61,731 nt of DNA. Source: Octopus bimaculoides (lineage: Eukaryota). The notes under the pieces were generated by a model. That model was not told the origin of the DNA and did not search any database. It saw only the letters and a list, made by a program, of their open reading frames with translations. Shown here in pieces: positions 17,359 through 54,985 of this stretch. The DNA lies in NCBI RefSeq assembly GCF_001194135.2, contig NC_068982.1, forward strand, positions 121,944,550 to 122,006,280. The letters are read 5' to 3'. The position numbers were made by a program, and so were the translations under genes. The stretch's first letter is position 1; the number at the start of each line of letters is the position of its first letter.

Positions 17359-17412
<54 letters not shown>

Positions 17413-24731: not shown

Positions 24732-24766
<35 letters not shown>

Positions 24767-27806: not shown

Positions 27807-27844
<38 letters not shown>

Positions 27845-30800
27845 TGTGTGCCTGTGCTTGTCCTACCACCATTGCTTGACAACCGATGTTGGTGTGTAAC
27901 ATAGCGGTTCAGCACAAGTAACCGATAGAATAAGAATCAGGCTTACAAAGAAGTCCTGGGGTCGATTTGTTCAACTAAAAGGTAGTGCTCCAGCATGGCC
28001 ACAGTTAAATGACAGAAAAGAATAAAAGAATCTCTAAGTTTCCTTATTTCAAAATACTGCTTCAGTACTAAGATACTTCTTACTCATTAGACAATATATT
28101 TATCAAAAGTGTTTATACACATTAATTTAACAACAAAAATGTTCTATGTAATGCTAACCACTATTAATGAAACAAACTGAGCAGATTTATTATATTCTGA
28201 GCATGTAGACAGATTAGTTCTACAACTTGTAACACAAATAAAGATAGTTCACTAATTTTTTGATTGTGTTTTGTGACATTAAACAAATGCATCAGATAAT
28301 TCTTTTATAAAAATCATGAAAAATATTTCATCTTTGCACAAAAAGTATACGTAGCATTCTGTAGAGATCATGTAGAGGTTTCTCATTATCCAGAAGACGA
28401 GACTGCACTAGTCTATGGATGTAGTTTACCTAATAAAATAAAAATGACTTCTTTAATGTATTTTTTTTAATATTCATGTATAACATAATGTTTAAAATGA
28501 ATTTAGTCGAACAGAAAAATAACACAGCTTGAAACAGTATTACAAGTGATATATTCCAAATTGTTGAATATGTATGCAAGTATATGTACAAATTTGAAAA
28601 AAATCTCTAAAATATTTTTTGACTGAGATTATTCCTTATAAAATCACTAAATGTACCAATTATGGATCCTTATGAACACATAACAATAAAACAAATAAAA
28701 TAATAAATTATTTATTAATAGCCACATCTTGATATATGGTGATAATCCTTTCTTCTATAGGCACAAGCCCTGAAATTTTGTAGGAGGGGACTAGCCAATT
28801 ACATCAACCCCAGTGCTTGATTGGTACCTATTTTTATTGACCCCAAAAGTATGAAATGCAAAGTTGACCGTGAAGGTATTTGGACTCAAAATGTAAAGAT
28901 GGGCAAAATGCCACTAAGCATTTTTGTCTGGCATGTTAACGATTCAGCCAGCTCACCGCTTTCATACATGGTAATAATGAGAAAGGAACTTTGGCTAAAA
29001 CATTAAAACAATGTGCATTATTTTTAAATGTATTTGAACCATGCTTCAATTAGTTTAAAATTAGACGCCAATTAAGTGTTTCTTTTGCTAAGTATTTGAC
29101 ACATTAAGCTACTTTTTTAATGTAAATAACATTTTACAGAAACTAAAATTCAAGAAGAATGTTAGCTCACACATTGAAAAAGAAATTGTTATATTAAAAA
29201 ATATCAGCAAATTTCTCTATTACTGAAAATCCCAAGTTGAAAGTGCCACTATAATGATGTATATATCTCTTGAAATAAAATTTACTTAGAAAAATATTTG
29301 AATATGTAAATACTAAAATTCAACAAGTAAATCGATGCTTTAAACTTAGAACTATTAAATGTTTACCTGCAGAGAGTGGACCAAGCTTTTTCCATCTACA
29401 AAAACATTTTTAAAAAAAGCATAGAATGATCAACAGAAATATAAAATGAACAGGTGATAGGTCTAATTTCATATGAAAATATTAAATTGAAAGACTATAA
29501 CAACTCTTAAGATTAATTAGTTCTACATGTTTCAATCAATTTTTAAATAAATATCTTTATGGGATTACATTCTTATTTTAATTAAACTGTTTCAATTAAT
29601 TGTTGTCAATAAGCCCTATATTGGGTTTAACTAGTCAGATCAAATATCAAAAGCCTCCCAGACATGACCACCTCTTTATTTTTCATAGGCATAGTGTACC
29701 TGAAGTCCAGTATTCAAAGTATCGTTTTTTTAAAGACAGTATGAGCTAAAGAAGATTTAGCAGATAGTTCTAACAGTTCAAGCAACTATATAGAGGCTCC
29801 CACATTGTATGACATATGCCATGGGACTAGTCATGGATATTCATGCTTATTTTCATATTTGATAGTAAGTATTTAAAGAATTAAAAGATTCAGTAGTTCA
29901 AATTGATAAGCTGCCAGCCTAGACATGACCACCCAGTCCTTTTCCTAGGCATAGCATACCAGGACATAATCTATTGTCCCTTTTTTTTTTAAGACAGCAA
30001 AGTGTGATATGAGGAAAATTTAGCTGCTAATTCCAGCAATTTGTGCAAGAGTTTGTATTCTAATACCAACAGTTGCTGTTTCTGCAGTCAAATCATTTTA
30101 TTTGTATTGGTCATGCCTAAGCAAGCCAAGTGAAATTGTAGTCATGGCCAATGCCAGTGTTGCATAATTGGCACCTGTGCCGGTAGCATGTAAAAAGCAC
30201 CCTTCGAATGTTGGGCCTCATGGAAGCAGTGACAAGGGACCAAGACCTATGGTAATATACTGTGCTTGGGAGGACCTGTCAAGCCAAATGAGATCATAGT
30301 CATGGCTGATGCTGGTGTTACATAACTGGCACGTGAAAAGTACCCACTACACTCTCGGAGTGGTTGGTGTTAGGAAGGGCATCCAGCCATAGAAACCATG
30401 CCAAATCAAATTGGAACCTGTGCAGCTCCCCAGCTTACTAGTTTTTCAGTCAAACTGTCCAACCCATACCATCATGGAAAGTAGGTGTTAAATGATGATG
30501 CTGATGATGAGCTAAATTTGAGGAAGTAGTGTCATTAGCTTACAGTGCTAAGCTTAAGTCACTCTATGGTAACCCTAGGGAAATATTGATACCTTTTTCA
30601 TTGAATACTTCACTGAAGTTTCTATAGATGATTTTTTTTAATACACAAATCACTAGGGATAGTCTACAACTCAAAAATGATCCTTTAACTTAGTGCATCA
30701 CTAAATTTGCCCTGCAATATTCTTTCTGTTCGACTTCCTATATTCTGAAGAACATTTCTAAAATTATATTTTTAACATTTTTATGGAGAAGCTTCAAGAA

Positions 30801-33800: not shown

Positions 33801-35400
33801 CAGTCCCTTTTTCCATGCTAGGATGATAAGAAAAGATGAGCCAGAGGGCTCTATGTCTGCTTTGACATAATTTCCACAGTTGGATTCCCTTCCTAACACC
33901 AACTGCACTCCCTCTTTATATATATATATATATATATATATATCGTTTTTGGATTTGGTTTGCAAGATTTTTTATGTGATTTCATGTGTTGAAGCATATT
34001 CTGTTGTGTCTGGGGAGAGTCATTCTCTTATTGTGCCTTAAAAGAGTCAAGACAATTGAAAAGGTTGCAAGATGCAATGAAAATTTTAAGAAAATAAAAA
34101 TAAGAAATAAGTGGAAATTTTACTGGTGAGTGTGTTAAATTTTAAGGCACAATAAGAAAATGACTCTCCCCAGACACAACAGAATATATATATATATGGG
34201 GAGCAACAAAGAAAGGTTTCTGAAGGATATAAATATGTGTATGTTGTGCCATCTGATACATACAAGACAGAAGAGAAAGATGCTTATACATCCATTCATA
34301 TTAAATATCTAACCTGCACACATAAACACTAGATATATGCCTCACAAAGTCTCAGCTAAAAACTTTTTACACAGTTTTTTACTAATGCCAGTAACATGTT
34401 GTAAAGCATCAGTTACTGATGATCCAGAGTGAGAAGCTGGATCCAAATTCAAAAACATACGTAGACACCAAAATACCTGTAACATCACACATCATTCAAA
34501 ATTTTGTAAATGTTGCCAATAATTTGCAGTGGAACCCAGGAATAAACTAACTCCAACTTGTCTCTGCTGATGCAAAACTACTTAATATATACTAGGCAGC
34601 ATACAAGTACATATCTGATTTAGCACAATGTGGTATATTATCCAGTGTGTTTCCAAACCAAACTTAAACAGGTTATATCTGAGGAGAAATATCCATAATG
34701 TTATTTTCTGGGAAAGGAGAAATCATTGCCACAAAAATTAGGAGTTGTAAGCAATAATCACTGACAAGCTTGTTATAAACATTGACAAATAACATTAGTA
34801 ATAATTTTTGCAGGACAAGAAAACTTATTACAACAGGATATAAAGAAAGGCTACAATTTTCTTTGTCAAAGACAGAAAAAGAAGAAAAAGCACACTGAAC
34901 TTACCGAGCATTAACTAAAGTTTCTCTTGCCATTCTGGCCATAGCATCAGCTGTTTCTACAAACAATAATGATTGCTGTTCCAAAAAGTTGCATATTTCC
35001 TACAAATATCAAATTCATTTTAGATGTTGCACAGGTATCAAAATATGTTAATGTTAAGTCTATAGCTATAATACTGTAACATTTAATGTAAACATGTACA
35101 CAATATAACAGATGCTACTAAAGATAAATTGATAACTTTCTATTAATTAAGGTATGGAACAATGGCATTAGGTATATTAATTAGGTAAGTATATGATGAT
35201 AATAGTTCATCTGTCAAATCTGAGGATGACCTAGTGACTGCTAAAACTATAACATATAAGAGAGAGAAATAAGGAAAACAAAAGAAGATGCCTCAAGTTA
35301 TTATGTTCATCTATGGTGATCAATGAAGACAATAACTTTGACCACACAGCACGTCAGCAGAAGAGACAACCATGCAACAGACTGGAGAATTACTACTGCT

Positions 35401-35448
<48 letters not shown>

Positions 35449-38400
35449 TGTGTATTTCTTCTATCTTAATGAATAAAAATTCTTCTGATNNNNNNNNNNA
35501 TAAATGGGTTAATAGAAACCAATGTAGCAAAGAACACAAAATAACTGTGGTTAGCTCCTGTTTTTAAGGCAGGAACTCTTTGAAATTTTGGGTATTTGAG
35601 TATATTTAAGAATTTAAGGATTGGAGAAAACGCATGTTATAATTGCATACTTTATTCCTACATATGTTTCAAAGGATTACAACCTGTGTGATCCATAGGG
35701 ATCTTTGATATTAAAATTGTAACCTTCTCATCAGGGAAAGCATGGGAATCATCTTAAACGTAAGACATTATGACCGATTATGAAAACAATAGATGGATAA
35801 GGTTATGACTTGATTCATTTGAAAAAAAAAAAAAAAACTCTTCAATTGCCTGTGCTATGGAAGTGACAGTATTTCAGTCACAAATGTGTGATGTCCAAAC
35901 CCCTGCAATGAAAGGTCTGTCATTGGCTCCAAGCAGTTTCATTATCTACTTTGACATTATTATTTTGTTAATGTTGAGATAAAAAAAAATAGCATTCACT
36001 TGCTTTCAAATAAAGTTAGTATATACTTATTTTCATATTTTCATAAACTAACAATATATGATGTCTGATAGTTAGTAGTGTTTGATAGGATATTTATCTT
36101 GATGTTTATATCAATGTCATAGAAAGATAGTTGAAACAGTTGGTAAAAAAAAGAGTGCTACATAAAGTGTTCAGTTAAGATTATGGCTTGAATGCCAAAA
36201 AGCACTTTGCACTTGAAATAAGAGATTTTGTTATAGAACAGCTGACAAATGAAGACAACTTATCAGAAGGATGTAGTGTCAAAGATTTATCTGTGATAAG
36301 TAGTAAAAAAAAAAAAAAAAAAAAAAAGCAGGAAGCAAATGTGCCTAGTATTGTAGAAGTAGTAGAGTCAATAAAAATGATGTGGATTAAATAAAGGATA
36401 AGTTAATTAAACAGAAAGAAATGAAGTTAGAAATAATCATTGAAGTTTTCCCGTTATTTGCAATTTTCTTCTTTTAAATCTCACTAATTCTAACCTTGAA
36501 TAAATATTGTTTTAACTAGGAAAATATTGTTTTGATGTGAAAATAACTGATACATAAAGTCTACATGTGCAAATGAATTGTCTGGATATTGTAATATAAA
36601 TGGTTACTTAGCAAATAGGAAATTGTTTGCACAAGTGACAAACATAAAAAGGATTGCAATACAAATGACTGATTTATGTTTTATATGATAAATAAGCATA
36701 GGTATTCATAATGGTAGCACAAATCATCAAGTAACAAACTAATTCCAAAATAAATATTGGGTTAGACAGCTGTTGTCTTAAAAATCTCTCAGCAAAATGT
36801 ATTTGAGTTGTTAAGAAAGAAATCATATAAGTGACAAAAAATTTACCCCGCATTTATCCACTTTACTAGCGCTATTAGCCCACTTCACCAAGGCCAAGAG
36901 GCGAACAAATAACTGGCGTGTTCTCTGTGAAAACTGGACAATCTCTATTTTTCTGAAATAAACAAAAATAATAAATATATAAAATAAAACAGGACATCTA
37001 TGCAGCAAGTTTACTCAATATGTGAAAGCATTTTTAATGTTTACACTATACCTAAAACACACCACAAACATTGATAAACCAAACACCTCAAAGTTGTTCT
37101 CTTTTAGCTTAGCAAAATTCCTTTAAATTTAACTTTAATATTATCTTTCAACAAGACTAAATATGAAATAAAGTGTTAATGTAAACTGTATTAAATATCA
37201 TAAACAGTATTATACACAGATGGATAAAGAAATTCTAAGAACAGGAAACCAGCATCGAAGACAAACCATGCAGTGGAAGACCATCAATTGCAACCAATGA
37301 TATGAATCACCAGCAACAGAATAAATTGATTCAGGCAGACAGATGCAGCACAACCTGTGAACTTGCTACACGACTGAACTGTTGTCATAATACATAGGAG
37401 ATGATGGATGACTGAGTATCAGAAAGTGTGTGTAAAGTGGATAGCTTGGTTGATGAGACTAGATTTGAAGGAGAGAAAGGTGGAAGTCTACTTCAATCTG
37501 CTGTAAGTATTTGAAGCCACTGAAAACATGGTTTTGCCCACTTTTACCTTACTTCCAGTACAACCTTTGTATATACACTCAATTTCTACATCTAGATCTC
37601 TCCATAACTCTCTTTCACCCATCACCAACAACTTCTTTCAAGACAAATAAGAATTACCCATGCCATTAAAATATTAATGTAAAAAAAATGTATTATTTAC
37701 CGTTCCATATCTGATTTTCGTGGAAGCCTGTAAAATAAAATTTTTAGAAAATGAAGATATTTGAACAATTAATATATTTTTGTTATGCAAATTATATTTG
37801 AGCCTAACATAAAATAATAGCAACACAAGTGTTTCCTTGAGACAAGTTGGGGAGCAAGAAGTGTGGCTCTTTGAACAAAATAACAGTCTATCAACAACAG
37901 CTGATAGAAGAATTGAAACCTCAAAACGGGTAATCTACTGCTAATGAAATGCCGAAATATCAGCAAGAGAGACAATCTCATAATCCACATAAGTACTACA
38001 TAGTTACCATATCCACAGCAATCACATAAATGACTGGATGAGAATCTTTGAAGCACTCTTCTACAGCCAAATACTCTTCTTGATGCTCATCCTTATTTAT
38101 TTTCAGATGAAGTACTTTGTTCAGATAGGGTTCTTCTTCAACATTTAGGAGAATTGTAACATTTGGATAAATGTGAAAGTCAACAAATTTTATTTGAGCT
38201 TACAAAATTCATAAAATATATATAAATACTTATATACTCTTAAGAGTGATGCATATACATTGGACCTCATGGAAGCAAAGTTGCTGAGCTCCCTACGAGT
38301 GTTGAGCCTCATAGAAGCAATGACCAAGACCTTTGGCATCATGTTGTGTTTGAGAAGAAGACCCGTCAAACCAAGCAAAATCACAGTCATGGCAGATACC

Positions 38401-38786
38401 AGTGTCACGCAAATGGCACCCATGCCAGTGGCACATAAAAGCACCCATTACAATCTCGGAGTGATTGGAAAGGCATCCAGCCATAGAAAACCATGCCAAA
38501 TCAGACTGGATCCTGGTGCAGCCTTCCAGCGTGCCAGCTCAGTCAAACCGTCCAACCCATGCCAGCATGGACAATGGACGTTAAATGATGATGATGATGA
38601 TAACATGAATAACTTATGAATAAATAACAATATATACACTTACAATTCTGACAGTACAGACATTTCTGCATAAGTTCTTTGAATAATATAGTCAATAAGA
38701 GTGTTAAGCGCAATACTTCCACCTCCTGTACCTCCCCCTTGTGACGGGCCAGTCGGCATAGGAAGCTGACTGTCAATGGGGGACAT
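1638..38786 (-). CDS. MED14: Mediator of RNA polymerase II transcription subunit 14; spliced CDS, 32 coding exons in window (3096 nt, 1032 aa), 3' part continues beyond position 1
   Basis: Exons in transcript order: 38786-38644, 37727-37701, 36952-36847, 34999-34905, 33464-33386, 32476-32347, 31573-31533, 31264-31177, 29395-29367, 28429-28351, 26560-26517, 25592-25504, 24444-24413, 22538-22426, 21107-21039, 19577-19538, 18604-18479, 16984-16906, 15917-15758, 15590-15392, 14717-14671, 13242-13114, 12046-11970, 10793-10682, 10033-9985, 9234-9097, 8029-7938, 6664-6503, 6072-5998, 5887-5811, 3377-3260, 1889-1638. All introns are GT..AG and all phases join in frame. The peptides match remembered MED14 motifs ([77 protein letters not shown]). 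Confidence 0.96.
2478..2578 (-). repeat. RTE LINE 3'-tail fragment flanked by (TA)n
   Basis: catcatcgtttaacgtccgctttccatgctagcatggg... matches the reverse complement of the 43020-43103 tail. Confidence 0.9.
3260..3377 (-). CDS. MED14: MED14 exon ([39 protein letters not shown])
   Basis: ORF track 3152..3343; U12 branch point upstream; gtaaat donor. Confidence 0.96.
3378..5810 (-). other. MED14: U12-type (minor spliceosome) GT-AG intron of MED14
   Basis: 5'ss GTATCCTTTT; branch point TTCCTTAAC (plus coordinates 3387-3395) 9 nt before the end of the intron; no polypyrimidine tract. Confidence 0.95.
3455..3752 (+). repeat. RTE LINE 3'UTR fragment with (GAT)n tail
   Basis: Near-identical to 42820-43103. 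Confidence 0.92.
5811..5887 (-). CDS. MED14: MED14 exon ([25 protein letters not shown])
   Basis: tacag acceptor; U12 donor GTATCCTTT; F.I.PQS.TH.R..FRN motif. Confidence 0.94.
5998..6072 (-). CDS. MED14: MED14 exon ([25 protein letters not shown])
   Basis: ORF track 5929..6177; ttcag/gtaagt. Confidence 0.92.
6503..6664 (-). CDS. MED14: MED14 exon ([17 protein letters not shown]...QLQEELN...LVQ)
   Basis: tacag/gtaagt; in frame. Confidence 0.92.
6788..7190 (-). mobile_element. tRNA-derived SINE carrying an RTE-type 3' tail; related copies about 24870-25200, 45560-45895, 46780-47215, 60930-61340
   Basis: tRNA-like head (gttaagaagtttgc...ggttcagtcccact), CORE-like ...ttgagcaagt..., and tail acccatgctagcatggaaaa...gttaaatgatgatg. 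Confidence 0.75.
7938..8029 (-). CDS. MED14: MED14 exon (...[15 protein letters not shown]...)
   Basis: tccag/gtaagt; EVR.YNYRKL motif. Confidence 0.94.
9097..9234 (-). CDS. MED14: MED14 exon ([11 protein letters not shown]...LLDEW...[13 protein letters not shown])
   Basis: tttag/gtaagc; in frame. Confidence 0.9.
9985..10033 (-). CDS. MED14: MED14 49-nt exon ([16 protein letters not shown])
   Basis: tttag/gtaaat; matches VFANCP...S.REQG. Confidence 0.9.
10220..10615 (-). mobile_element. Old RTE LINE ORF C-terminal fragment
   Basis: Degenerate reverse-complement similarity to 58540-58860. Confidence 0.6.
10682..10793 (-). CDS. MED14: MED14 exon ([20 protein letters not shown]...NWIVE)
   Basis: ttcag/gtaag; in frame. 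Confidence 0.9.
11970..12046 (-). CDS. MED14: MED14 exon ([17 protein letters not shown]...)
   Basis: tgcag/gtaagt; IPHQG.QV.G.G motif. Confidence 0.93.
13114..13242 (-). CDS. MED14: MED14 exon ([15 protein letters not shown]...[16 protein letters not shown])
   Basis: ORF track 13075..13386; tgcag/gttggt. Confidence 0.9.
14030..14630 (-). repeat. Cluster of RTE 3'UTR fragments. Other approximate copies: 5087-5290, 5530-5745, 16620-16770, 17120-17357, 17816-18025, 22660-22842, 24106-24255, 27258-27440, 30095-30510, 38250-38600, 39633-39697, 43240-43545, 52068-52160
   Basis: Shared ggatgcccttcctaa.gccaaccact, ccatgct.gcatgg and (cat)n motifs. Confidence 0.85.
14671..14717 (-). CDS. MED14: MED14 47-nt exon ([16 protein letters not shown])
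   Basis: ttaag/gtaagt; basic KRK patch as in vertebrate MED14. Confidence 0.85.
15392..15590 (-). CDS. MED14: MED14 exon ([19 protein letters not shown]...GPYATVF)
   Basis: ORF track 15354..15581; taaag/gtgagt. Confidence 0.9.
15758..15917 (-). CDS. MED14: MED14 exon ([16 protein letters not shown]...[17 protein letters not shown])
   Basis: accag/gtatgt; in frame. Confidence 0.9.
16906..16984 (-). CDS. MED14: MED14 exon ([26 protein letters not shown])
   Basis: ORF track 16851..17135; ttcag/gtatgt. Confidence 0.88.
17363..17410. repeat. (TA)n microsatellite. Similar tracts near 24740, 27810, 33920, 35403, 41250, 43775; (GA)n/(GT)n near 11890 and 19850; poly-A at 1122-1159
   Basis: Direct inspection. 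Confidence 0.95.
17411..17772 (-). mobile_element. tRNA-derived SINE (octopus-type, CORE-like); related copies about 4565-4950, 27650-28030, 41880-42190, 47925-48318
   Basis: ccgggttca.tcccactgcgtggcaccttgggcaagtgtcttc head/core, (CA)/(TA) microsatellite, and tail ggtgctccagcatggccgcagtcaaa. Confidence 0.85.
18479..18604 (-). CDS. MED14: MED14 exon ([17 protein letters not shown]...IDIQRG...)
   Basis: tttag/gtaaga; in frame. Confidence 0.88.
19538..19577 (-). CDS. MED14: MED14 40-nt exon ([13 protein letters not shown])
   Basis: ttcag/gtaagt; phase 0-1 fits its neighbours. Confidence 0.82.
19630..19845 (+). mobile_element. Internally deleted mariner element (TIRs plus transposase C-terminus)
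   Basis: TIRs gtgctgaaaagttcctggctt / aagccagggagttttcagcac; internal [21 protein letters not shown]. Confidence 0.85.
21039..21107 (-). CDS. MED14: MED14 exon ([23 protein letters not shown])
   Basis: tgtag/gtaagt; HLSIEKL motif. Confidence 0.93.
21610..21945 (+). mobile_element. tRNA-derived SINE of a further family; other copies about 39405-39600 (-), 47750-47900, 48530-48722 (-)
   Basis: tRNA-like head followed by tgtgttgtg.tcctgagcaagacacttta core; body shared with 39405-39600. Confidence 0.75.
22426..22538 (-). CDS. MED14: MED14 exon (YKLSVHV...KPLQISHIP...LSIR)
   Basis: actag/gtaag; KPLQI.H.P motif. Confidence 0.9.
23075..23990 (+). mobile_element. Decayed mariner transposase relic, with an inverted 5' piece at about 23780-23990
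   Basis: Remnants of SGRP, W.PH.L, TD.KW and N.RPH motifs with many stops. Confidence 0.7.
24413..24444 (-). CDS. MED14: MED14 32-nt microexon ([10 protein letters not shown])
   Basis: ttcag/gtaaga; supplies exactly the phase 2 to phase 1 bridge that the flanking exons require. Confidence 0.82.
25504..25592 (-). CDS. MED14: MED14 exon ([30 protein letters not shown])
   Basis: ttaag/gtaag; in frame. Confidence 0.92.
26517..26560 (-). CDS. MED14: MED14 44-nt exon ([15 protein letters not shown])
   Basis: Peptide matches the remembered vertebrate sequence; U12-like acceptor region; gtatgt donor. Confidence 0.95.
26561..28350 (-). other. MED14: Probable second U12-type intron of MED14 with a non-canonical 5'ss
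   Basis: 5'ss GTATACTTTT (+5 C>A); branch-like TTCCTTAAG (26573-26581) 12 nt before the intron end; no typical polypyrimidine tract. Confidence 0.65.
28351..28429 (-). CDS. MED14: MED14 exon ([26 protein letters not shown])
   Basis: attag acceptor; unusual donor GTATACTTT. Confidence 0.92.
29367..29395 (-). CDS. MED14: MED14 29-nt microexon ([10 protein letters not shown])
   Basis: tgtag/gtaaac; matches DGRALVHSMQ. Confidence 0.9.
31177..31264 (-). CDS. MED14: MED14 exon ([29 protein letters not shown])
   Basis: ttcag/gttggt; the phase-1 end is confirmed by the next exon. Confidence 0.92.
31533..31573 (-). CDS. MED14: MED14 41-nt exon ([14 protein letters not shown])
   Basis: tttag/gtaagt; matches NGRVKF.VE.EFE. 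Confidence 0.93.
32347..32476 (-). CDS. MED14: MED14 exon ([10 protein letters not shown]...[11 protein letters not shown])
   Basis: tttag/gtatgg; in frame. Confidence 0.93.
32548..32983 (-). mobile_element. Internally deleted mariner element
   Basis: TIRs gaaaagttcataggctg / cagcctatgaacttttc; minus-strand [23 protein letters not shown]. Confidence 0.88.
33386..33464 (-). CDS. MED14: MED14 exon ([26 protein letters not shown])
   Basis: tttag/gtaag; near-identical to the conserved MED14 motif. Confidence 0.96.
33945..34190. repeat. Repeat with internal inversion (48-bp inverted arms) inserted in (TA)n
   Basis: 33996-34043 versus 34140-34187 are 47/48 reverse-complementary. Confidence 0.75.
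34905..34999 (-). CDS. MED14: MED14 exon ([32 protein letters not shown])
   Basis: tgtag/gtaagt; in frame; motif similarity. Confidence 0.93.
35646..35744 (-). ncRNA. Type I hammerhead ribozyme motif (Penelope-like/retrozyme type) in a MED14 intron, sense to the pre-mRNA
   Basis: Core CUGAUGA (35734-35728), GAAA (35670-35667), GUA cleavage triplet; stem I of 4 bp + UAA bulge + 6 bp; stem II of 11 bp with an inner GAUCC/GGAUC hairpin; minimal stem III with palindromic CAUAUG. Confidence 0.75.
36847..36952 (-). CDS. MED14: MED14 exon ([35 protein letters not shown])
   Basis: ORF track 36823..37008; ttcag/gtaaat. Confidence 0.97.
37240..37410 (+). mobile_element. Mariner HTH-region fragment
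   Basis: [14 protein letters not shown]...IQADR peptide. Confidence 0.6.
37701..37727 (-). CDS. MED14: MED14 27-nt microexon (LPRKSDMER)
   Basis: tacag/gtaaat, phase 2-2; matches LPRKSDVER of vertebrate MED14. Confidence 0.92.
38644..38786 (-). CDS. MED14: MED14 coding exon 1 (MSPIDSQ...[19 protein letters not shown]); the exon acceptor is at 38814, giving 28 nt of 5'UTR
   Basis: tttcag acceptor, ATG at 38786, gtaagt donor; resembles the MED14 N-terminal LSTLI.F...RAY.EL.VL helix. Confidence 0.9.
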
Positions 38787-41245
38787 CTTGGAAATTCAAA
38801 GTTACAACTCACAGCTGAAAAAATAAAAGATAAATATAGATGAATTTAATACAAAGCAAAATGTAAATCATTTAAAACCAATGAAAAAAAAGTTTAAAAA
38901 CCATTAATAAAAATTAAAAAATTTACTGTGCTTATGTTGTCATTAAGGGTTTAAAAGACAATACAGATTCTTGTACCTTAGTGAATACTATGGTAGCACT
39001 TGATGCAGCTATGCAGTCAATTTTTCAAATGGTAGTTTCCTGCTGTAAACACCCACAAATGAAACAATGTCCCTTATCAGAACATAGGCTGTGTTGCACC
39101 TTTTTTGTTTACTCACACTGATCTTTGCTCTTACATTACCATTTCCTATATTTCGGGATTAACCAAGCAGATTTTTGTCACATTTGCATGTGTCCTAGTA
39201 ACAAAGAGTACCATAAGATAGACCTTTTCATACATACCATTTACAGTCTGGCATGGGTAAACACTGTTGTTATAGACCATTTTACAAATATTGTTAATCT
39301 ATTATTTAAAATTTACAGGAAACTATCATTTTTATCTTGATAACATAAATACAAGACGATGTTATAATAGTGTATTTATATCATAATGTTACTGTAAAAG
39401 ATCCCTTTCAGTCATGAATGACCATACAATTGCACCTAGAAAGTTCCCCTCCAAGGTACAAGTCCGGGCAAGGTTGTTTATGGAAGACCAGAGTCACTCA
39501 TGCATACCAACCTCCCCTCTCTACGCCATTGATGTATCCAAAGGAAAGGAAAAAGCTGATACAGCTTGGCACCAGTGATATCACAACTCATTTCTACAGA
39601 AGGTTTTGACTTGAAGGAAAGCTGGTTCCTTCTATCATCATCATCGTTTAACGTCCGCTTGCCATGCTGGCATGGGTTGGACGGTTTGACTGAGGATCAA
39701 GTTTAGCAAATATAAAGAGGCTTCTTTGTTGGCCTTGTCTCCACAAGATATAGAATACATCATTGTATCCTCAATTACTATTTTGCTCTCACATCCAACA
39801 TTTCAAGAGGGAAGGAACTAATCATAAAAGACAACCTCCGAAATCAACCGTAAATCACTCTTTTCCTTTACGACCAGTATACATCAAAGCAACTGAGCAC
39901 ATACCCGCCTCCAAAACACACTAGAAATTTCTTGTCCTTCAATATATTGAAATCAAATCCTTTTACTCATAGTTAACGATTTATCTACAGTTATTATCCC
40001 TGAATGACTAAATAAAGTATTTTGGATTGCTAAAAACAAAGTAAAGTTGTTTATTCTTCTTGATAGCGGCAAACGATTCAACCTTTGAGAACATTCTAGC
40101 AAAGCTAATCGTCTTTAGATTCCACCTTAGCACTAATCACTGACGGAGCGGTTTGAACCCAATTTCGAGATTCTTTACAAACCGATTTCATTCTCATGCT
40201 AAACTGTCAGACAGTCTTTCATTTAGAGTAGAATTTATCTGTCGGAGAATTCAAGCACGTTACCATCTATAATTGGTTTAAGATGCCATGTAATAAAAAA
40301 CTAAATCTTTGCTTCAATTCTAATAAACAAATCCTAAATAGTTGTAAACATGATTCCATCAAACTTTTTTTAAATAGTAATAAAATAAAATGTTAGATTT
40401 AATAATTAAAATTTAACACAAAACTTATTTCTAGTAACGGAATGTTTTACATCACAGCTAACTTTATATAGAGCATTATTAAAGAATGGTAAAATCTTTT
40501 TTCTTTTAATATGGACAGGTTATTTTAGCCCCCATCCACCCCCATATCCATATCTGATCGAGTTGACCTACAATTAAAGTCGTTCCGATCATAACCATCG
40601 CGTTTTATTCTCTCGAACTTTTCATGTATAGAACAACATTATCTAAACTGTCATTTTATCTTATTTAAAGATGGTATATGATTCGAAGTGAATTAGGTTG
40701 CAATTTCTAGCAGGTCGAGCGAGCGTGTAAGAATCCTCCTCGAAGCTCGTCAATCTGGACAGTTTGCTTGTTTTGTGATTGTCATCTTCATATCAGAAGT
40801 TGCGAAGTTTCGAAAGCATTGCTGTGTTGTTCACAGACGTAGATTTTCGATGGGAAACAGGGAGAAAAATCATCAAGCAAAACTACATTACAAAAATAAA
40901 AGAGCCGTAATAATTCAACACTTTATATGAAAAATAAATAAGAGCCGGCCACTGGAGTAAACAACGAGTTAAACTTATGAACCAGTTTCTATTCTTAATT
41001 ATTTCATATATACGTTATATAGCTCTTGAGAATCTCATTTCTCCTCACCTATATTTTTTTAGAAATTTGTGGGACCTCAACATACCATTTATTATTACAT
41101 CAGTTCAAACTCATGTAATAATGCCTAACAATAACAACATATTGGAATGAAATTCTTTCACTGATAGCTGACGATTTACTACAAAATTAAACACCCTAAA
41201 TAGATATATAATGTATTTACAATAAGCTGAACTCCTGAAAAGTCG

Positions 41246-41285
<40 letters not shown>

Positions 41286-41312
41286 GATAGATATGAAAGA
41301 ATAAGAACGTAC

Positions 41313-41471: not shown

Positions 41472-43769
41472 ATGTAAGTGTAACTTGTTTAATTCTTTGT
41501 GGCATTTCTGAACATTGACTGTTTTTAATTGTTAATTGTTATGATTTTACAGTGATGTTAAGATGCATTATGCGTGTTAGATAAATGCCTAAATTTAAAA
41601 ACTCACAAGGTGCTTGATGAACATACTCCGAAGTAAAATGTTACGACTTAGTGGAGCAACATTTCATAAAGGCGGCATATCTTCGGTTTAGTGCCCCCAC
41701 TACCGGTATTTTTTTTTAATGCATGTTTTTAACTGAAATTTTGCAGGCATACGTTATTAAATGCAATATTGATGAAATAAAAACAAAAACTTGTCGATTT
41801 TTTTTACTAACTTGTTCGTGATTATTATACAACTGAAAAAAAAATCGATATTATCTTAATTAATATCATTTATTATTTACTCTTTTACTTATTTAAGTCA
41901 TTTGACTGCGGCCATGCTGGAGCACCGCCTTTAGTCGAGCAAATTGACCCAGGACTTATTCTTTGTAAGCCTAGTACTTATTCTGTCGGTAACTTTTGCC
42001 GAACCGCTAAGTTACGGGGACGTAAACACACCAGCATCAGTTGTCAAGCGATGTTGGGGGGACAAACACACACACATATATATATATACGTATATATGAA
42101 GACACTTGCCAAAAGTGCCACGCAGTGGGACTGAACCCGGAACCATGTGGTTGGTAAGCAAGCTACTAACCACAGCCACTCCTGCGCCAATATAAATTGG
42201 AAGGCTCAATAAAAAATTCCTATTTTCGTTTGGTCTGCAACAATTCAGTATTATTACTGAATGCTTTTGTTTTGCATTGTGTACCCATACTTTTGATTTG
42301 TATTGTAGTTCGCTTTATCGTGCCTTTGACTTTCACGTTGATAATAAATGATATAAAGTAAAGATTATTTGCCAACCTAATGTGGCATCATCTCCAGCTG
42401 ACTATACGACGATATCTCCTAAGCGTCAGTAGTGGTGTGCAAGAGAGACGATTGCGCTGGTTTGGACATGTGGTGAGAATGAATGAGGATAGCTGCGTGA
42501 AAAAGTGCCACTCCCTAACAGTTGAGGGAACCCGTGGAAGAGGTAGGCCCAGGAAGACCTGGGCTGAGGTGGTGAGGCAAGACCTTCGAACATTGGGCCT
42601 CACCGAGGTGATGACTACTGACCGAGACCTTTGGAAATGTGCTGTGCGTGAGAAGACCCGGCAAGCCAAGTGAGATCGTTGCCAGTNNNNNNNNNNNNNN
42701 NNNNNNNNNNNNNNNNNNNNNNNNNNNNNNNNNNNNNNNNNNNNNNNNNNNNNNNGGTGGCACATAAGATGTACCATCCTGAGCGTGACCGTTGCCAGTA
42801 CCGCCTGACTGGCCTTGTAGGGTTTTCGAGCGAGACCGTTGCCAGTGCCCCTGGATTGGCTCTTGTGCAGGTGGCACATAAAAGACACCATTTCGAGCGT
42901 GGCCGTTTTCGTGCGGGTGACACGTAAAAGCACCCACTACACTCTCTGAGTGGTTGGCGTTAGGAAGGGCATCCAGCTGTAGAAACTCTGCCAAATTAGA
43001 TTGGAGCCTGGTGTAGCCATCCGGTTGCACCAGTCCTCAGTCAAATCGTCCAACCCATGCTAGCATGGAAAGCGGATGTTAAACGATGATGATGATGATG
43101 ATGTACATAAAAGCATTGATAAGTATTCACGTTCACATACTTTTCATGTACAAACATGTGCACACACTTATGTACATGCACATCCACATATATAAAAAAA
43201 AGATGCACATAAAAACATACATATATATATATATGCTCATCCATGCTGGCATGGGTTGGACGGTTTGACTGGGCTAGTATGCTGGAAGGCTGCAACACGC
43301 TCCAGTGGCTTTCTACGGCTGGATGCTCTTCCTAACATCAAGCACTCCGAGAGTGTAATGGGTGCTTTTACATGTCACTGGCACGGGTGCCATTTGTGTG
43401 ACACCAGTATTTGCCATGACTGCGATTTTACTTGGTTTCATGGGTCTTCTCAAGCACGACATAATGCCAAAGGTCTTGGTCATTGCCTCCGTGAGGCCCA
43501 ACACTCGAAAGGAATGCTAGCCACTTTGCCTCCATGAGGCCCAACGCTGCTGATATATATATATATTCATATTCAGTTAAATGAAAGCAAGAAAATGGAG
43601 AGTTAATAATAATTATCTATTATTAAAAAATTGGTAATCTTTATTTCTTATAGCTGTTTCCATTAGTACTCAATAGGTAAATTACAAATTTATGCTTCAA
43701 ATTTGCATTTATATGTTATTAGCATAATTTCATCAAAGAAAGACATACATTAAGATATTACATGCCGAC

Positions 43770-43812
<43 letters not shown>

Positions 43813-46800
43813 GTATGTATGTGAGTGTGTGTAAACCCTCTAAGAATCCATAAGTCAGGAAAAAATGCTCTCCTATATCTGTTAGTAGAGTGGGTATGTT
43901 AATCAAAGTGTACGGTATTATGTATTGCACCTGATCTTACCAATCAGTTTTGCACTAGGTGTTCAACGGAGTGTCAGGTAACAGTTCGATTAAGTAATTC
44001 TGTGCTTTTAAGAGTTGGCATTTAATACTTCATTTCATAACTACCATCTCAGAAGAGTACTGCATTACATAATCGGACTGTTACTTAACACTCCATGGAA
44101 CTCCTAATGCGAAACTGATTGGTAAGATTAGCCATAATGGATTTTGTGTTTGTGTCCCTGTAACTTTGCGGTTCAGCAAATATCTACAGTATAAGTACCA
44201 GGATTTAAGAAAGTACTAGAGTCAATTCATTTGACTAAAAATTCTCAAATCAAAGCCCCAGCATGGCTGCAGTCTAATTATTGAAACAAGTAAATAAAAA
44301 AAAGATAAAGTTATGGTGAAAACAGAGATAGGAGGGCACTAAACCGTAGTTATGTCCTACTGAGGCTATGCACTGCATGCCTTTCACTTTCATGTTGATC
44401 AGGATAATAATATCAATTTTTAAGTTGTGCAATGATCAAGAGCCAAGTTGTAGGATGGTTTTAAGTATAAACTTCTTTTCCGTGTAAAAGAAAATATGAA
44501 AAAAATTTATAAAAAATTTATCAATCAAAATTTTCATCATCTACACTTTGAAAATGTATTCAGGAAAAATTCATTTAAAAATTCCACTAAAATATATCTA
44601 TTATTAAGAAGATTATGTAAAAAAAAAAAAAAGTCCCTCATTCACCAAATGCTTCATATCAGAGAAAGACTGACGCTATGAAAGTGTTGCCCCAGCATGG
44701 CCGCAGCTCTTGTGCTAAAGCGATTAAAACAGTACACACACACACCAACACATATGAATATTCATGCACAAATAACTATGTGTACATAAATGTTCATATA
44801 TATTGATATATGCATGCATCTATATAACACGCAACGTACAGAATACATCCACATATATACACAGCTCACAACCACATACTTCTCATATGACGTATTTACG
44901 CAACTCTATTTCGATATAAATATGTCGGATGTACTTTTCTAATACTTCCTTAGTTGTTCTCCAGTTTGACAAACTTTTAAGAAGCATTAAACCCTTCTGC
45001 AAGTACGCCCACGAACACGCTCATATACATACACAAAAAGCACATACATACATAAAATGTACTTAGGTCATAGGGGACCTAAGAAATTGGTTGGTGAATA
45101 GTTTCCTCTTTTTACCTAATGTAGATACCACCTCTCAGACTGTTGCTTGAGTTTCAGCACATATGAGATACCCTTACAAAACTTATGCCATTACAACACA
45201 GAAGATCCCCACTACCCAATCTATTCCATAATTTGGTTTTTTATCAGGGGTAGGGGAACAAAAATAGGATTTAAGCTAAATCCTTTACTTCCCTAAAGAG
45301 TACTCCTTATGCATCTGCTTATCAATAAAGGCTTCACCATAACTCTAGGGGAGTTTTACTTTTTGATCCCTAATTTTTCACTTGTGAATATGAAGAGTAA
45401 ACGCATTGTATTGGCAGATTCTATGAGCAGTAGCAGCAGCAGGTCAATTCTAATCAAGCAGACCTATAATGAACAGGCATTCCAGCCATGACAATCACAT
45501 CTTTGTTTTCTTCAAATGATGAATTAGCTCAGTGTTCAGAGCACAAGTCAAACTGCGTTGCAATATTTGTTCCAACTCTCTACACTCTTTTTGCATTTAA
45601 TAATTCTTTCAGGGGTGATAAAGTTAAAATATACCAGTCCAAGTTGTTCGTACAAATACACTGACTATGTATATATGTTTGTATTACTATCTCCTTGCCT
45701 TTCATCATGTGATAGTTGTAAGCAGTGTCCTTCATTTCAGAGACACGTCTAGTCATGGGGAAAAATTACCTTCCTTGGAAAATAGATGAGGGTTGGTGAT
45801 AGGAAACGCATCCAGTTGTTGAAAATCTGTCTCAACTAATTTCATGTGACCCATGCAATCATGGAAAAGTAGACATTAAAATGATGATGACAACAACAAC
45901 TCTCTGTTAACTGTTTTTATTTACAAATTAATGTGTTAATCATTTGCATGAGAATGTATTCAAATGATTCTTGCAACCAGAACTTACATTATGTTCTTTG
46001 TAAGTAATTATTCTTTGCTACTCTTTTTTTTTTTCTCATTTTGCAGGCCAGCACCAAGTACCTTATCAAATTGGTCAATGTATAGATTACTTGAATTATC
46101 GTCAGTTAACTGCCTATTTGTAATTGATGCCATTAAATATTTATACCCACAATTGAATTCAAGTTGTCCTGATGACTGTAAAATAGATAAACTGCAAGAC
46201 TTCCATAAACAATTTTCAACTATACACTCAATTCATAGTTGTAAAAATTTTGAAAATATCAAAGAACATGATTTTAATTGGTTTATTAATTTATATTCCA
46301 AGTAAGTTTCCTATTTTTAAAAAAATTTTCTTGTACTTTTTAACATTCATTTTTTCAATGCTGGCTTGTGTATAATTTCTTTTGTGTTATTGTACACATG
46401 AACATGTTGGTACTCATTTCCAAAATGGAAATAAGTACCAACACTTGAACAATTGTGAAGATCTTTTCACATGAAATCATTGGTAGCCTTGTTAACCCAC
46501 AAATAAACATATATATATATTTTGAAGGTTGTCTGTTATGGCCAGTCAGAGAGTGACCATTGGTTTTGCACTTAGCTGTATAGGCAACTCATCAGATGTA
46601 CTTTCAACCATTTGAGTCTGACAAGTCACCTATACAGTTAAGCAAAACGAATGGTCTCTCTCTGACTGCATATAACAAACAACCTACTAAATATACTACT
46701 GCTCTAATGTGTTAGAGTGTGCTTTTTTTTGGTGGGGGGGATATATGAACTACTGATACACACACTAACACATAGGGGCAGATATAACTCTGTGGTTAGG

Positions 46801-49517: not shown

Positions 49518-50078
49518 ACTATATGATAAAAGCATAAATCTTGGTATACCTTTAACTCATGAAGATGTATATCTTGTTAATTCTGAAAACAAGGAAGATG
49601 TTTTGTCAAGATAAAAAAAAAAAAAAGACGGAAATCAAATCTGAAAAAATTCAAAGATAAAATTATGGGAAAAAAGCATAAACAAGTACAAGTGTAAACA
49701 ATTATATAAAAGAACTCAACCTTGTAAAATGCTTGTTTTTAAAACAAAAACCCATTACCTCTGATTTCCTTGTAATTTTTATTTTTCTCCAATTTCATGT
49801 AGTGATTTAATTTGTTACTTTCATTTTGGTGCTAGTTCAATTTTTTTTATAGAGGAGAGACAGTCAAATGAGTCTACTGCCTTACTGTTGCCTTGTTACC
49901 ATCTTAGAGACATTGAGTTTATATACCATAAAAAAATCAGGGACAACTCATTGATGTTTGTATTAATGCCACTTTTATGGATATTTTTTTAGTTGAAATT
50001 TATTTTTCTTAATATATCTTGTTCTTGTTGCTATATTCTCTCAGTAAATTTCTATATCTTTTATACCTATTTATGAAC

Positions 50079-50084
50079 AATAAA
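50079..50084 (+). terminator. Candidate polyadenylation signal (AATAAA) of the uncharacterised gene
   Basis: AATAAA about 560 nt after the stop, at the end of a U-rich 3'UTR-like stretch and just before a repeat; an earlier AATAAA lies inside the CDS. Confidence 0.4.
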
Positions 50085-50123
50085 GTCTAAATCCCAAATA
50101 CTTGTCTGATAAAGAAATTTTAT

Positions 50124-50748
50124 CATCATCGTTTAACGTCTGCTTTCCATGCTGGCATGGGTTGGACAGTTTGACTGAAAACTGGCAAGCCAGGAGACTG
50201 CACCAGGCTCCAATCTGAACCAGCGAGATTTCTACAGCTGGATGCCCTCCTAACACCAACCATTCCAAGAGTGTAGTGGGTGCTTTTTATGTGCCACCAG
50301 CACAAGGGCCAGTCAGATGGTACTAGCATCAACCATGCTCGAATGCTGCTTTTTACACGCTACTGGCATGAGAGCTTGTCAGGCAGTACTGGCATTGACC
50401 AGGCTCAAATGGTGCTTTTTACATGCCACCAGCACAGGTGCCAGTCAGGTGGCACTGGCATCAGCCATAACAACAGCTTCACTTGACTTACCAGGTTTTC
50501 TCAAGCACAGCATATTGCCCAACAATTGAAAGGTACTTTTAAGTGGGCCGGTTATGCAACACTAGCATCAACCATGGCTACGATCTCACTTGGCTTGTGG
50601 GGTCTTCTCAAGCACAGCATATTTCCAAAGGTCTCAGTCGCTTGTCTTTGCCTCTGTGAGGCCCAATGTTCGAAGGTTGTGCTTCACCACCTTATCCCAG
50701 GTCTTCCTGGGTCTACCTCTTCCACAGGTTCTCTCCACTGTTAGTGTG
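50124..50748 (-). mobile_element. RTE LINE 3' fragment
   Basis: Reverse complement of the 42.4-43.1 kb family (RGRPRKTW region and tail). Confidence 0.85.
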
Positions 50749-54581: not shown

Positions 54582-54985
54582 GGTAGAGATGGACTATATG
54601 TAATCTGAACCTTTCCCCCCCTTATTTATTAACTTTTTTTTTTACGGAATCCCACGTTTTAGGCTATGGANNNNNNNNNNNNNNNNNNNNNNNNNNNNNN
54701 NNNNNNNNNNNNNNNNNNNNNNNNNNNNNNNNNNNNNNNNNNNNNNNNNNNNNNNNNNNNNNNNNNNNNNNNNNNNNNNNNNNNNNNNNNNNNNNNNNNN
54801 NNNNNNNNNNNNNNNNNNNNNNNNNNNNNNNNNNNNNNNNNNNNNNNNNNNNNNNNNNNGGGGGGGGGGGATCGAAATTTTAAAATTGAGATTTTTGAAA
54901 TTTTTTTTTCCAGAATCGGATTCTCCATGGTAAACAAAATTTAAAAGTGGGGGTATACCCAGATTACATATACTCCATCTCCACC
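54582..54985. mobile_element. Non-autonomous TIR element with 26-bp TIRs and 8-bp TSD (Merlin-like), nested in a SINE; contains an N gap
   Basis: TIR GGTAGAGATGGACTATATGTAATCTG versus right end 24/26; TSD GATACTTA at 54574-54581 and 54986-54993. Confidence 0.8.
54671..54859. other. Assembly gap; other gaps at 35490-35499, 42687-42755, 56614-56704
   Basis: N runs. Confidence 1.

What the first reader, a model, noticed from the sequence alone, without database searches (positions are those of the whole stretch)
35646..35744. Complete type I hammerhead ribozyme fold, sense-oriented inside a MED14 intron
Seen on the minus strand: CAUGCUUUCC-CUGAUGA-G[AAGGUUACAA...GAUCC CUAU GGAUC...UUGUAAUCCUU]U-GAAA-CAUAUG-UA^GGAA UAA AGUAUG. 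All catalytic core positions are present (C3-A9, G12-A14, A15.1-U16.1, GUA triplet). The only defect is G10.1 pairing with U instead of C, consistent with CpG decay. Stem I is 4 bp, a 3-nt bulge and 6 bp; stem II is unusually long with an internal hairpin; stem III is minimal, with a self-complementary CAUAUG. Established: minimal-stem-III type I hammerheads with palindromic loops occur in Penelope-like elements and retrozymes and are thought to cleave as dimers; here an AAUAAA overlaps the 3' arm of stem I. Inference: the MED14 pre-mRNA carries a latent self-cleaving site (between 35659 and 35658) in the intron between exons 36847 and 34999. It may be a relic of an octopus retrozyme/PLE family, or may be activated in trans by other copies.
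Basis: partly seen in the sequence, partly recalled or inferred. Interest (0 to 1): 0.85.

Follow-up and report, generated by a model that had tools for sequence, protein, structure and literature searches.

The report
Lone hammerhead-ribozyme-like motif in MED14 intron
A 99-base stretch inside an intron of the MED14 gene has every conserved base and all three helices of a type I hammerhead self-cleaving RNA, on the transcribed strand, but it is a single unsupported copy, so it is most likely a leftover of a ribozyme-carrying mobile element and not a proven working ribozyme.

Summary
On the minus strand, 35744-35646 reads stem I / CUGAUGA / a 57-nt helix II / GAA / A-C-AUAU-G-U / A17 / stem I. 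It lies in sense orientation in MED14 intron 2, between the exon ending at 36847 and the exon starting at 34999.

It is the only one of 38 CUGANGA sites in the window with hammerhead architecture. A match this good is expected about 0.0015 times per window under a Markov null. With the short palindromic helix III that the literature gives for metazoan type I hammerheads, the rate is about 4e-5 per window, or a few per Gb-sized genome.

Independent support is missing:
- No Rfam hammerhead model matches, even at E<=10.
- The window holds no second copy, no tandem array and no Penelope coding remnant.
- No relative turned up in any collection I could search.
- The G10.1-C11.1 pair is G.U, helix II is far longer than usual, and the thermodynamic model prefers a competing fold.

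Best reading (about 0.5): a solitary relic of a hammerhead carried by a Penelope-like element or retrozyme, weak or inactive as a monomer. Chance is about 0.35. A domesticated, functional intronic ribozyme is about 0.05. This would be a new member of a known kind, of modest interest.

The parts
35735..35744 (-). Stem I, 5' strand (CAUGCUUUCC): the distal 6 nt pair with 35651-35646, the proximal UUCC with 35658-35655
35728..35734 (-). Catalytic core C3-A9, CUGAUGA
35671..35727 (-). Helix II domain, 57 nt. G10.1.U11.1 wobble, then AAGG/CCUU, a bulged U, UUACAA(UUU)/(AGG)UUGUAA, an internal loop and the apical hairpin GAUCC-CUAU-GGAUC. MFE -13.2 kcal/mol, z = -2.0
35668..35670 (-). Core G12 A13 A14
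35660..35667 (-). Helix III: A15.1-U16.1 and C15.2-G16.2 closed by the palindromic tetraloop AUAU. ACAUAUGU can form an 8-bp intermolecular helix of -9.0 kcal/mol
35659..35659 (-). A17. The predicted cleavage is 3' of this base, between 35659 and 35658, in the triplet GUA
   Evidence: position rule from established hammerhead numbering
35646..35658 (-). Stem I, 3' strand (GGAA-UAA-AGUAUG) with the 3-nt bulge. AAUAAA lies at 35656-35651 and is not significant (159 copies in the window)
36847..36954 (-). Upstream MED14 exon ([36 protein letters not shown]), GT donor at 36846-36845
34904..34999 (-). Downstream MED14 exon ([32 protein letters not shown]), AG acceptor at 35001-35000
35490..35499 (.). 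Assembly gap (10 N), about 150 nt downstream of the motif on the minus strand. Hidden sequence, including further copies, cannot be excluded
35403..35455 (.). (TA)n microsatellite downstream of the motif. This is a common feature of the window, so its closeness is weak evidence at best

Best explanation
The motif is a solitary remnant of a type I hammerhead ribozyme of the kind carried by metazoan Penelope-like elements and non-LTR retrozymes. It was inserted in sense orientation into MED14 intron 2 and has since been cut off from any recognisable element.

Shown: the full core, the three helices in type I topology, and the short palindromic helix III.

Inferred:
- Its origin from a mobile element.
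- That U11.1 arose from C by CpG decay.
- That as a lone monomer it cleaves poorly or not at all. Helix III is only 2 bp, the base of helix II is a wobble, and a competing fold that pairs core bases is 4.3 kcal/mol more stable.
- That efficient cleavage would need a second copy to form the 8-bp intermolecular helix III, or a helper protein, neither of which is available to a single-copy intron.
- That it therefore has no consistent effect on MED14 expression.
For: - **Complete motif at the stated coordinates**.
- **Rarity.** It is the only one of 38 CUGANGA sites with this architecture. Chance expectation is 0.0015 per window at equal constrained energy, and about 4e-5 per window when helix III must be 1-2 bp with a palindromic loop. 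That helix III form was defined in advance in the literature for metazoan type I hammerheads (PMC4209133).
- **Null model checked.** Decoy-core descriptors on the real window match the null.
- **Strand-specific fold.** z = -1.84 on the transcribed strand against -0.01 on the other.
- **Resemblance to Penelope-type variants.** A short helix I (4 bp), a large bulged helix II and a palindromic helix III are the traits listed for Penelope-type hammerhead variants. Most of those occur as single motifs from truncated elements (PMC4209133).
- **Such elements occur in cephalopods.** Penelope-like elements are an established repeat order in Octopus vulgaris, with 329 recent insertions (PMC13282606). 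A squid genome has 235 Rfam Hammerhead_1 hits (PMC6962438).
- **The U at 11.1 has a simple explanation.** Strong CpG depletion (0.14 in the intron) makes C11.1 to U plausible.
- **A weak helix II base need not abolish cleavage.** An axolotl hammerhead family with a U.U mismatch at the base of helix II still cleaves (PMC7229834).
Against: - **No Rfam hammerhead model** (Hammerhead_1, HH9, HH10, II, 3) reaches even E<=10 on 119 or 601 bases.
- **No second copy, tandem unit or flanking repeat** in the window.
- **No reverse transcriptase or GIY-YIG remnant** in the intron or in the long ORFs of the window.
- **No related sequence** in the protein-word search, the 1.84-billion-protein scan, or the metagenome and viral collections.
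- **Helix II is atypical.** It is 57 nt, against the usual 4-8 bp with a small loop.
- **The 10.1-11.1 pair deviates.** The highly conserved G10.1-C11.1 pair is G.U, and the extra nucleotide between A9 and 10.1 that is typical of Penelope min-hammerheads is absent.
- **Singletons are normally discarded.** The authors of the descriptor approach set aside hits that cannot be grouped into a family (PMC4209133).
- **The fold is not favoured.** The hammerhead fold has a probability of about 1e-4 in the ensemble.
Confidence: 0.5

Rival explanations
1. Chance constellation. An AT-rich intron happens to contain CUGAUGA, GAAA and UA at spacings that allow three modest helices. No ribozyme ancestry, no activity.
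For: - The loose descriptor matches 0.36 times per window. A match of equal energy occurs 0.0015 times per window, which means dozens per Gb-sized genome.
- Even the strictest estimate leaves a few per genome, and the number of windows the first stage read is unknown.
- No covariance-model hit.
- Single copy.
- Fold z-scores are only about -2.
- Helix II is atypically long and 10.1-11.1 is not G-C.
- CAUAUG-like words are common in a (TA)n-rich sequence.
Against: - For one window the probability is 1e-3 to 4e-5.
- All 13 invariant core positions plus H17 are intact.
- Helix III has exactly the form described for invertebrate type I hammerheads (PMC4209133, PMC7229834).
- The stability is specific to the transcribed strand.
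- The expected density of true hammerhead-derived loci in genomes rich in Penelope-like elements is probably higher than the chance rate. This last point is inference.
Confidence: 0.35
2. Domesticated, functional intronic hammerhead. The motif is kept by selection in the MED14 pre-mRNA and cleaves it conditionally, with protein help or in particular folding contexts. It would tune splicing or transcript yield, like the conserved intronic hammerheads of amniotes.
For: - Sense orientation inside an intron of a conserved gene.
- Intact core in a strongly decayed, CpG-poor intron.
- Precedents: type I hammerheads conserved in RECK, CTCL and DTNB introns (PMC6155905), and a Penelope hammerhead that cleaves only when its protein is added (PMC11167929).
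Against: - No conservation data could be obtained. A related-species genome exists (L001, about 80% identity), but its intron 2 is out of reach.
- The motif does not match the HH9/HH10 models.
- The weakened helix II base and the unstable helix III argue against efficient cleavage.
- Retrozymes are depleted from introns, which implies selection against such insertions (bioRxiv 10.64898/2026.07.22.740005).
Confidence: 0.05
3. The motif lies antisense within a plus-strand, poly(A)-tailed retroposed fragment whose A-run is at 35821-35838. The hammerhead-like fold on the minus strand would then be incidental.
For: - An A18 run lies immediately 3' of the region on the plus strand.
- There is a possible short direct repeat, AACTCTT, at 35573-35579 and 35838-35844 (read).
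Against: - A 7-nt repeat at that distance is expected by chance about one time in five (my estimate).
- No other copy of this stretch occurs in the window.
- A and T runs are common here.
- No tRNA-like head.
- The plus strand has no fold signal.
Confidence: 0.07
4. Intronic box C/D snoRNA, with UGAUGA as box C.
For: Weak Rfam snoRNA alignments cover the site (Afu_328 at 15.7 bits, DdR12 at 16.2 bits, E 2-5). Intronic sense location is typical of animal snoRNAs.
Against: - The scores are far below the gathering thresholds (70 bits).
- There is no CUGA box D: the aligned word is UUGA.
- There is no terminal stem joining the flanks of boxes C and D.
Confidence: 0.01

Closest known systems
Hammerhead variants in the pseudo-LTRs of Penelope-like elements (Cervera & de la Pena 2014, PMC4209133)
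   Same: Type I topology, short helix I (4-5 bp), a larger helix II that may carry a bulge, and a minimal palindromic helix III that implies action as a dimer. Most genomic copies are solitary motifs from truncated elements.
   Different: Here there is no flanking pseudo-LTR or RT/GIY-YIG remnant and no family of copies to define a consensus. 10.1-11.1 is G.U instead of the conserved G-C, there is no extra nucleotide between A9 and 10.1, and helix II is 57 nt instead of 6-8 bp plus a small loop.
Canonical type I hammerheads of metazoan non-LTR retrozymes (PMC7229834)
   Same: The same core. Helix III of 2 bp capped by a tetraloop is described there as the invertebrate form. One axolotl family (HHR_Amex2) has a weakened helix II base and still cleaves.
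   Different: Retrozymes are tandem arrays of about 170-400-bp units, whereas this is a single unit with no tandem repeat. Canonical helix II is 4 bp with a loop that contacts loop 1. The Rfam Hammerhead_1 model does not match.
Conserved intronic hammerheads of amniotes (HH9 in RECK, HH10 in CTCL; reviewed in PMC6155905)
   Same: A type I hammerhead in sense orientation inside an intron of a protein-coding gene, thought to descend from retroelement ribozymes.
   Different: Those are ultraconserved across species and match dedicated Rfam models. Conservation could not be tested here, and the HH9 and HH10 models do not match.

Membership tests
Hammerhead ribozyme, type I | Conserved core: C3 U4 G5 A6 N7 G8 A9, G12 A13 A14, A15.1-U16.1, H17 | tested here: met
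   CUGAUGA at 35734-35728, GAA at 35670-35668, A15.1 at 35667, U16.1 at 35660, A17 at 35659
Hammerhead ribozyme, type I | Three helices around the core, with the open ends in helix I | tested here: met
   The descriptor scan gives 4, 5 and 2 contiguous base pairs for helices I, II and III. The constrained fold is -18.6 kcal/mol
Hammerhead ribozyme, type I | G10.1-C11.1 pair at the base of helix II | tested here: not met
   G10.1 (35727) faces U11.1 (35671), a wobble pair. The pair is called highly conserved in PMC4209133
Hammerhead ribozyme, type I | Match to a curated covariance model (Rfam Hammerhead_1, HH9, HH10, II or 3) | tested here: not met
   No hit at gathering score on the window. 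No hammerhead hit at E<=10 on 601 or 119 bases
Hammerhead ribozyme, type I | Hammerhead fold is the favoured or a near-favoured structure | tested here: inconclusive
   Hammerhead fold -18.6 against MFE -22.9 kcal/mol. Pair probabilities are 0.85 (10.1-11.1), 0.125 (2.1-1.1) and 0.006 (15.1-16.1). A weak helix III is normal for this class
Hammerhead ribozyme, type I | Site-specific self-cleavage 3' of H17 | not testable with these tools
   Needs in vitro transcription or RNA end mapping
Hammerhead ribozyme, type I | Covariation in the helices among homologues | not testable with these tools
   No homologue could be retrieved
Penelope-like-element hammerhead | Located in a pseudo-LTR next to an RT/GIY-YIG ORF, often with a second copy nearby | tested here: not met
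   No Pfam domain in the three sense-strand reading frames of intron positions about 35500-36846 or in long ORFs of the window. No second hammerhead in 61.7 kb. Solitary truncated copies are nevertheless common for this family (PMC4209133)
Penelope-like-element hammerhead | Minimal, palindromic helix III (positions 15.2-16.2 and loop 3) | tested here: met
   CAUAUG is self-complementary. The 8-bp intermolecular helix is -9.0 kcal/mol
Penelope-like-element hammerhead | Unpaired nucleotide between A9 and 10.1 | tested here: not met
   G follows A9 directly and is needed to pair with U11.1
Non-LTR retrozyme | Tandem repeats of about 170-400 bp, each with one hammerhead | tested here: not met
   Tandem Repeats Finder and self-BLAST find none around the site. 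Caveat: a 10-N assembly gap at 35490-35499
Domesticated intronic hammerhead (HH9/HH10 type) | Sense orientation in an intron of a host gene | tested here: met
   MED14 exons lie on the minus strand on both sides
Domesticated intronic hammerhead (HH9/HH10 type) | Conservation of the motif in orthologous introns | not testable with these tools
   A related genome exists (L001, 80-84% identity), but its intron 2 cannot be fetched
Box C/D snoRNA | Box C (RUGAUGA), box D (CUGA) and a terminal stem | tested here: not met
   Only box C is present. Rfam snoRNA hits score 15-16 bits against cut-offs of 70

The most novel reading that the evidence does not exclude
The motif is a host-retained, conditionally active hammerhead in the pre-mRNA of an essential Mediator subunit. 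It would be the first invertebrate counterpart of the conserved intronic hammerheads of amniotes, with cleavage gated by its weak helix III and wobble helix II base, for example by protein assistance or pairing in trans.
Probability: 0.05. Interest if true: 0.65.

Novelty: new member of a known kind. Interest (0 to 1): 0.3.

Why it matters
If it is a relic, it is one more trace of ribozyme-carrying retroelements in a cephalopod-like genome. It also shows that descriptor searches find complete hammerhead motifs that covariance models miss when helix II is long.

It would matter more if the motif proved conserved or active. A self-cleaving site in the sense strand of an intron of an essential transcription co-factor gene would give a tractable invertebrate system for a long-open question: what intronic hammerheads do to co-transcriptional splicing.

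Tried and rejected
- **Rfam.** Gathering threshold on the whole window, then E<=10 on 601 and 119 bases. No hammerhead hit, only noise (MicA, CRISPR-DR46, two snoRNAs).
- **Other copies in the window.** BLASTN, mismatch pattern searches, repeat and tandem-repeat finders. Only (TA)n and A-runs match.
- **Orthologous intron by way of proteins.**
  - MED14 exon queries found only distant animals or intron-poor genomes.
  - Exact look-ups of three window ORFs near the site found nothing.
  - The exon-1 ORF led to a related species (L001, 80-84% identity), but only for the exon 1 region.
- **Multi-copy family by way of translated frames.**
  - The word-based protein search found nothing.
  - The full HMMER scan gave one apparent hit (P0048, E = 4.8e-12). 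It is the translation of a 62-bp satellite that shares only an 'ISKIP.D' word, its score is inflated by six repeats, and its DNA has no hammerhead core. Rejected.
- **Metagenome pattern scan.** Six matches, about the number I estimate by chance for the pattern, none resembling the motif beyond the searched bases. Two scans of viral contigs found nothing.
- **Penelope coding remnants.** No Pfam hits in the intron or in long ORFs.
- **tRNA-like SINE head.** None.
- **Target-site duplication for a plus-strand retroposon.** Only a 7-nt repeat, not significant.
- **Own covariance model.** I did not build one from remembered hammerhead sequences, because it would not be independent evidence.
Full report
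**1. The observation**

Read on the minus strand, 35744-35646 is CAUGCUUUCC-CUGAUGA-G[AAGG...CCUU]U-GAA-A-C-AUAU-G-U-A-GGAA-UAA-AGUAUG. In standard hammerhead numbering the positions are:

| Element | Window coordinates |
|---|---|
| C3-A9 | 35734-35728 |
| G10.1 / U11.1 | 35727 / 35671 |
| G12-A14 | 35670-35668 |
| A15.1 / U16.1 | 35667 / 35660 |
| A17 | 35659 |
| G1.1 | 35658 |

- Stem I is 4 bp, a UAA bulge and 6 bp.
- Helix II is a 57-nt imperfect hairpin.
- Helix III is 2 bp closed by the palindromic tetraloop AUAU.
- AAUAAA at 35656-35651 is real, but this hexamer occurs 159 times in the window.

**2. Gene context**

- The ORF at 36823-37008 (minus) contains [34 protein letters not shown].
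- A query built from it and the exon 1 peptide finds only MED14 proteins, Pfam PF08638.
- A MED14 probe maps 16 colinear segments on the minus strand, from 36954 down to 1764. The exon 1 ORF at 38795-38643 lies upstream of them.
- The flanking exons end at 36847 (GT at 36846-36845) and begin at 34999 (AG at 35001-35000).

The motif is therefore sense-oriented in this 1.85-kb intron. The tools did not identify the organism.

**3. Is it more than chance?**

I wrote a descriptor: CUGANGA, helix II up to 90 nt, GAAA, helix III up to 40 nt, U-H, and stem I, with G.U pairs allowed. It finds exactly one site on both strands, even at its loosest setting. The window has 38 CUGANGA sites, against 27.6 +/- 5.1 expected.

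| Null test | Expected matches |
|---|---|
| First-order Markov, stems >=3/3/1 | 0.36 per window |
| First-order Markov, stems >=4/4/2 | 0.02 per window |
| First-order Markov, stems >=4/5/2 | 0.008-0.011 per window |
| Constrained hammerhead energy <= -18.6 kcal/mol (the candidate's value) | 6 sites in 4000 windows, 0.0015 per window |
| 48 decoy cores of the same composition, real window | 0.29 (loose) and 0.02 (4/5/2) per decoy |

The decoy result shows that the null is not badly optimistic.

The literature describes metazoan type I hammerheads in advance as having helix III of 1-2 bp capped by a small palindromic loop (PMC4209133). When helix III is restricted to that form, 2,000,000 random core contexts give 297 matches, and only 3 of them reach the candidate's energy. 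That number of contexts equals about 72,000 windows. The rate is therefore about 4e-5 per window, or a couple per genome of a few Gb (the genome size is my assumption).

The motif is thus improbable for one window. It is not impossible in a genome-wide scan of unknown extent.

**4. What fails**

- No Rfam family reaches its gathering score anywhere in the window. No hammerhead model appears at E<=10 when only 601 or 119 bases are searched.
  - Those E-values include a factor of 4227 families, so the cut-off is near 14 bits. The long helix II would cost a covariance model heavily.
  - The miss therefore weakens the case for ribozyme ancestry but does not refute it.
- The fold is only modestly stable: z = -1.84 for the 99 nt and -1.99 for helix II alone. 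It is strand-specific, with z = -0.01 on the plus strand.
- The thermodynamic optimum (-22.9 kcal/mol) pairs core bases. The hammerhead fold is 4.3 kcal/mol higher, and its helix III closing pair has probability 0.006. A weak helix III is normal for hammerheads that act as dimers.
- ACAUAUGU can form an 8-bp intermolecular helix of -9.0 kcal/mol. A single-copy intron offers no partner.

**5. Relatives**

- *Within the window:* there is no second copy, no tandem unit and no flanking repeat. A 10-N gap sits 150 nt downstream.
- *Coding remnants:* no reverse-transcriptase or GIY-YIG remnant is detectable in the intron or in the window's long ORFs.
- *Outside the window:* nothing related was found.
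  - The word-based protein search on translated frames found nothing.
  - The full protein scan gave only a satellite artefact.
  - The metagenome scan returned six matches, about the number I estimate by chance, none resembling the motif beyond the searched bases.
  - Two scans of viral contigs found nothing.
- *A related species exists but is out of reach:* a Logan contig (L001) is 80-84% identical around MED14 exon 1. That is the right distance for a conservation test. Intron 2 of that species could not be reached.

**6. Comparison with known systems**

- Penelope-type hammerheads have a short helix I, a larger and sometimes bulged helix II and a palindromic minimal helix III. They cleave poorly as monomers and occur mostly as solitary motifs from truncated elements (PMC4209133).
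- The candidate shares these traits, but with three differences:
  - It lacks the conserved G10.1-C11.1 pair.
  - It lacks the extra base after A9.
  - Its helix II is several times longer.
- Invertebrate retrozyme hammerheads have the same 2-bp-plus-tetraloop helix III, but they sit in tandem arrays. An axolotl family with a U.U mismatch at the base of helix II still cleaves, 22% per hour as a monomer and much better as a dimer (PMC7229834).
- An Anolis Penelope hammerhead cleaves only when its protein is present (PMC11167929).
- Sense intronic type I hammerheads are known and conserved in amniotes (PMC6155905).
- In Xenopus, retrozymes are depleted from introns (bioRxiv 10.64898/2026.07.22.740005).
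- Cephalopods carry Penelope-like elements (PMC13282606) and Rfam-level hammerheads (235 in the giant squid, PMC6962438).
- CpG observed/expected is 0.14 in this intron. The canonical C11.1-G12 is a CpG, so decay to U11.1 is a reasonable inference.

**7. Verdict**

My estimates are:

| Reading | Probability |
|---|---|
| Lone relic of a hammerhead from a Penelope-like element or retrozyme lineage, weak or inactive as a monomer | about 0.5 |
| Chance constellation | about 0.35 |
| Incidental antisense feature of a plus-strand retroposed fragment | about 0.07 |
| Domesticated functional ribozyme | about 0.05 |
| Box C/D snoRNA | about 0.01 |

If real, it is a new member of a known kind. The decisive tests are copy number and consensus in the genome, conservation of the orthologous intron, and a cleavage assay. 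None can be run with the tools available here.

Noticed in passing
window 2385-2516, 4932-5129, 12159-12287, 17694-17976, 27284-27503, 39481-39696, 43240-43516, 50074-50359 (minus-strand frames): The same translated words ([32 protein letters not shown]) recur at many places. This indicates at least eight copies of one short interspersed repeat family inside the MED14 introns. It is unrelated to the hammerhead site.
   Followed up: no
L001 (Logan SRR11869384) against window 38253-39354: A contig from another sequencing run carries the identical 48-aa MED14 exon 1 ORF but is only 80-84% identical in the surrounding DNA. A related species at a useful distance for intron conservation tests therefore exists in public data.
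   Followed up: partly
window 35490-35499, 42687-42755, 54671-54859, 56614-56704: Four runs of N (assembly gaps). The first lies in the same intron, 150 nt downstream of the motif.
   Followed up: no
window 57901-58593 (+): A 230-aa ORF upstream of MED14 has a PHD-finger match (PF00628, E = 1.9e-5, just above the curated cut-off). It could be an exon of a neighbouring gene or a domain derived from a transposon.
   Followed up: no
window, whole; intron 35000-36846: Strong CpG depletion (observed/expected 0.33 in the window, 0.14 in the intron) with an excess of TpG/CpA (1.28-1.34). This is consistent with germline methylation of this gene body.
   Followed up: partly
window 17361-17411, 24736-24790, 27810-27850, 33917-33943, 35403-35455, 41249-41295, 43773-43818: (TA)n microsatellites are unusually frequent, roughly one per 5-9 kb, and there are several A/T runs of 16-24 nt.
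   Followed up: no
L003 1431-1494 (metagenome contig Ga0124853_1113318): The pattern hit falls in what looks like a CRISPR-type array. A repeat of about 37 nt containing CTTTGAAACCCCGCCCTGATGA recurs with a spacer between copies. It is unrelated to the finding.
   Followed up: no
L009 4949-6174 (ENA contig ctg20549l): A 62-bp satellite with about 20 copies is translated as a 408-aa 'protein' in the public protein library. It produced a misleading E = 4.8e-12 hit because its six repeats add their scores.
   Followed up: yes
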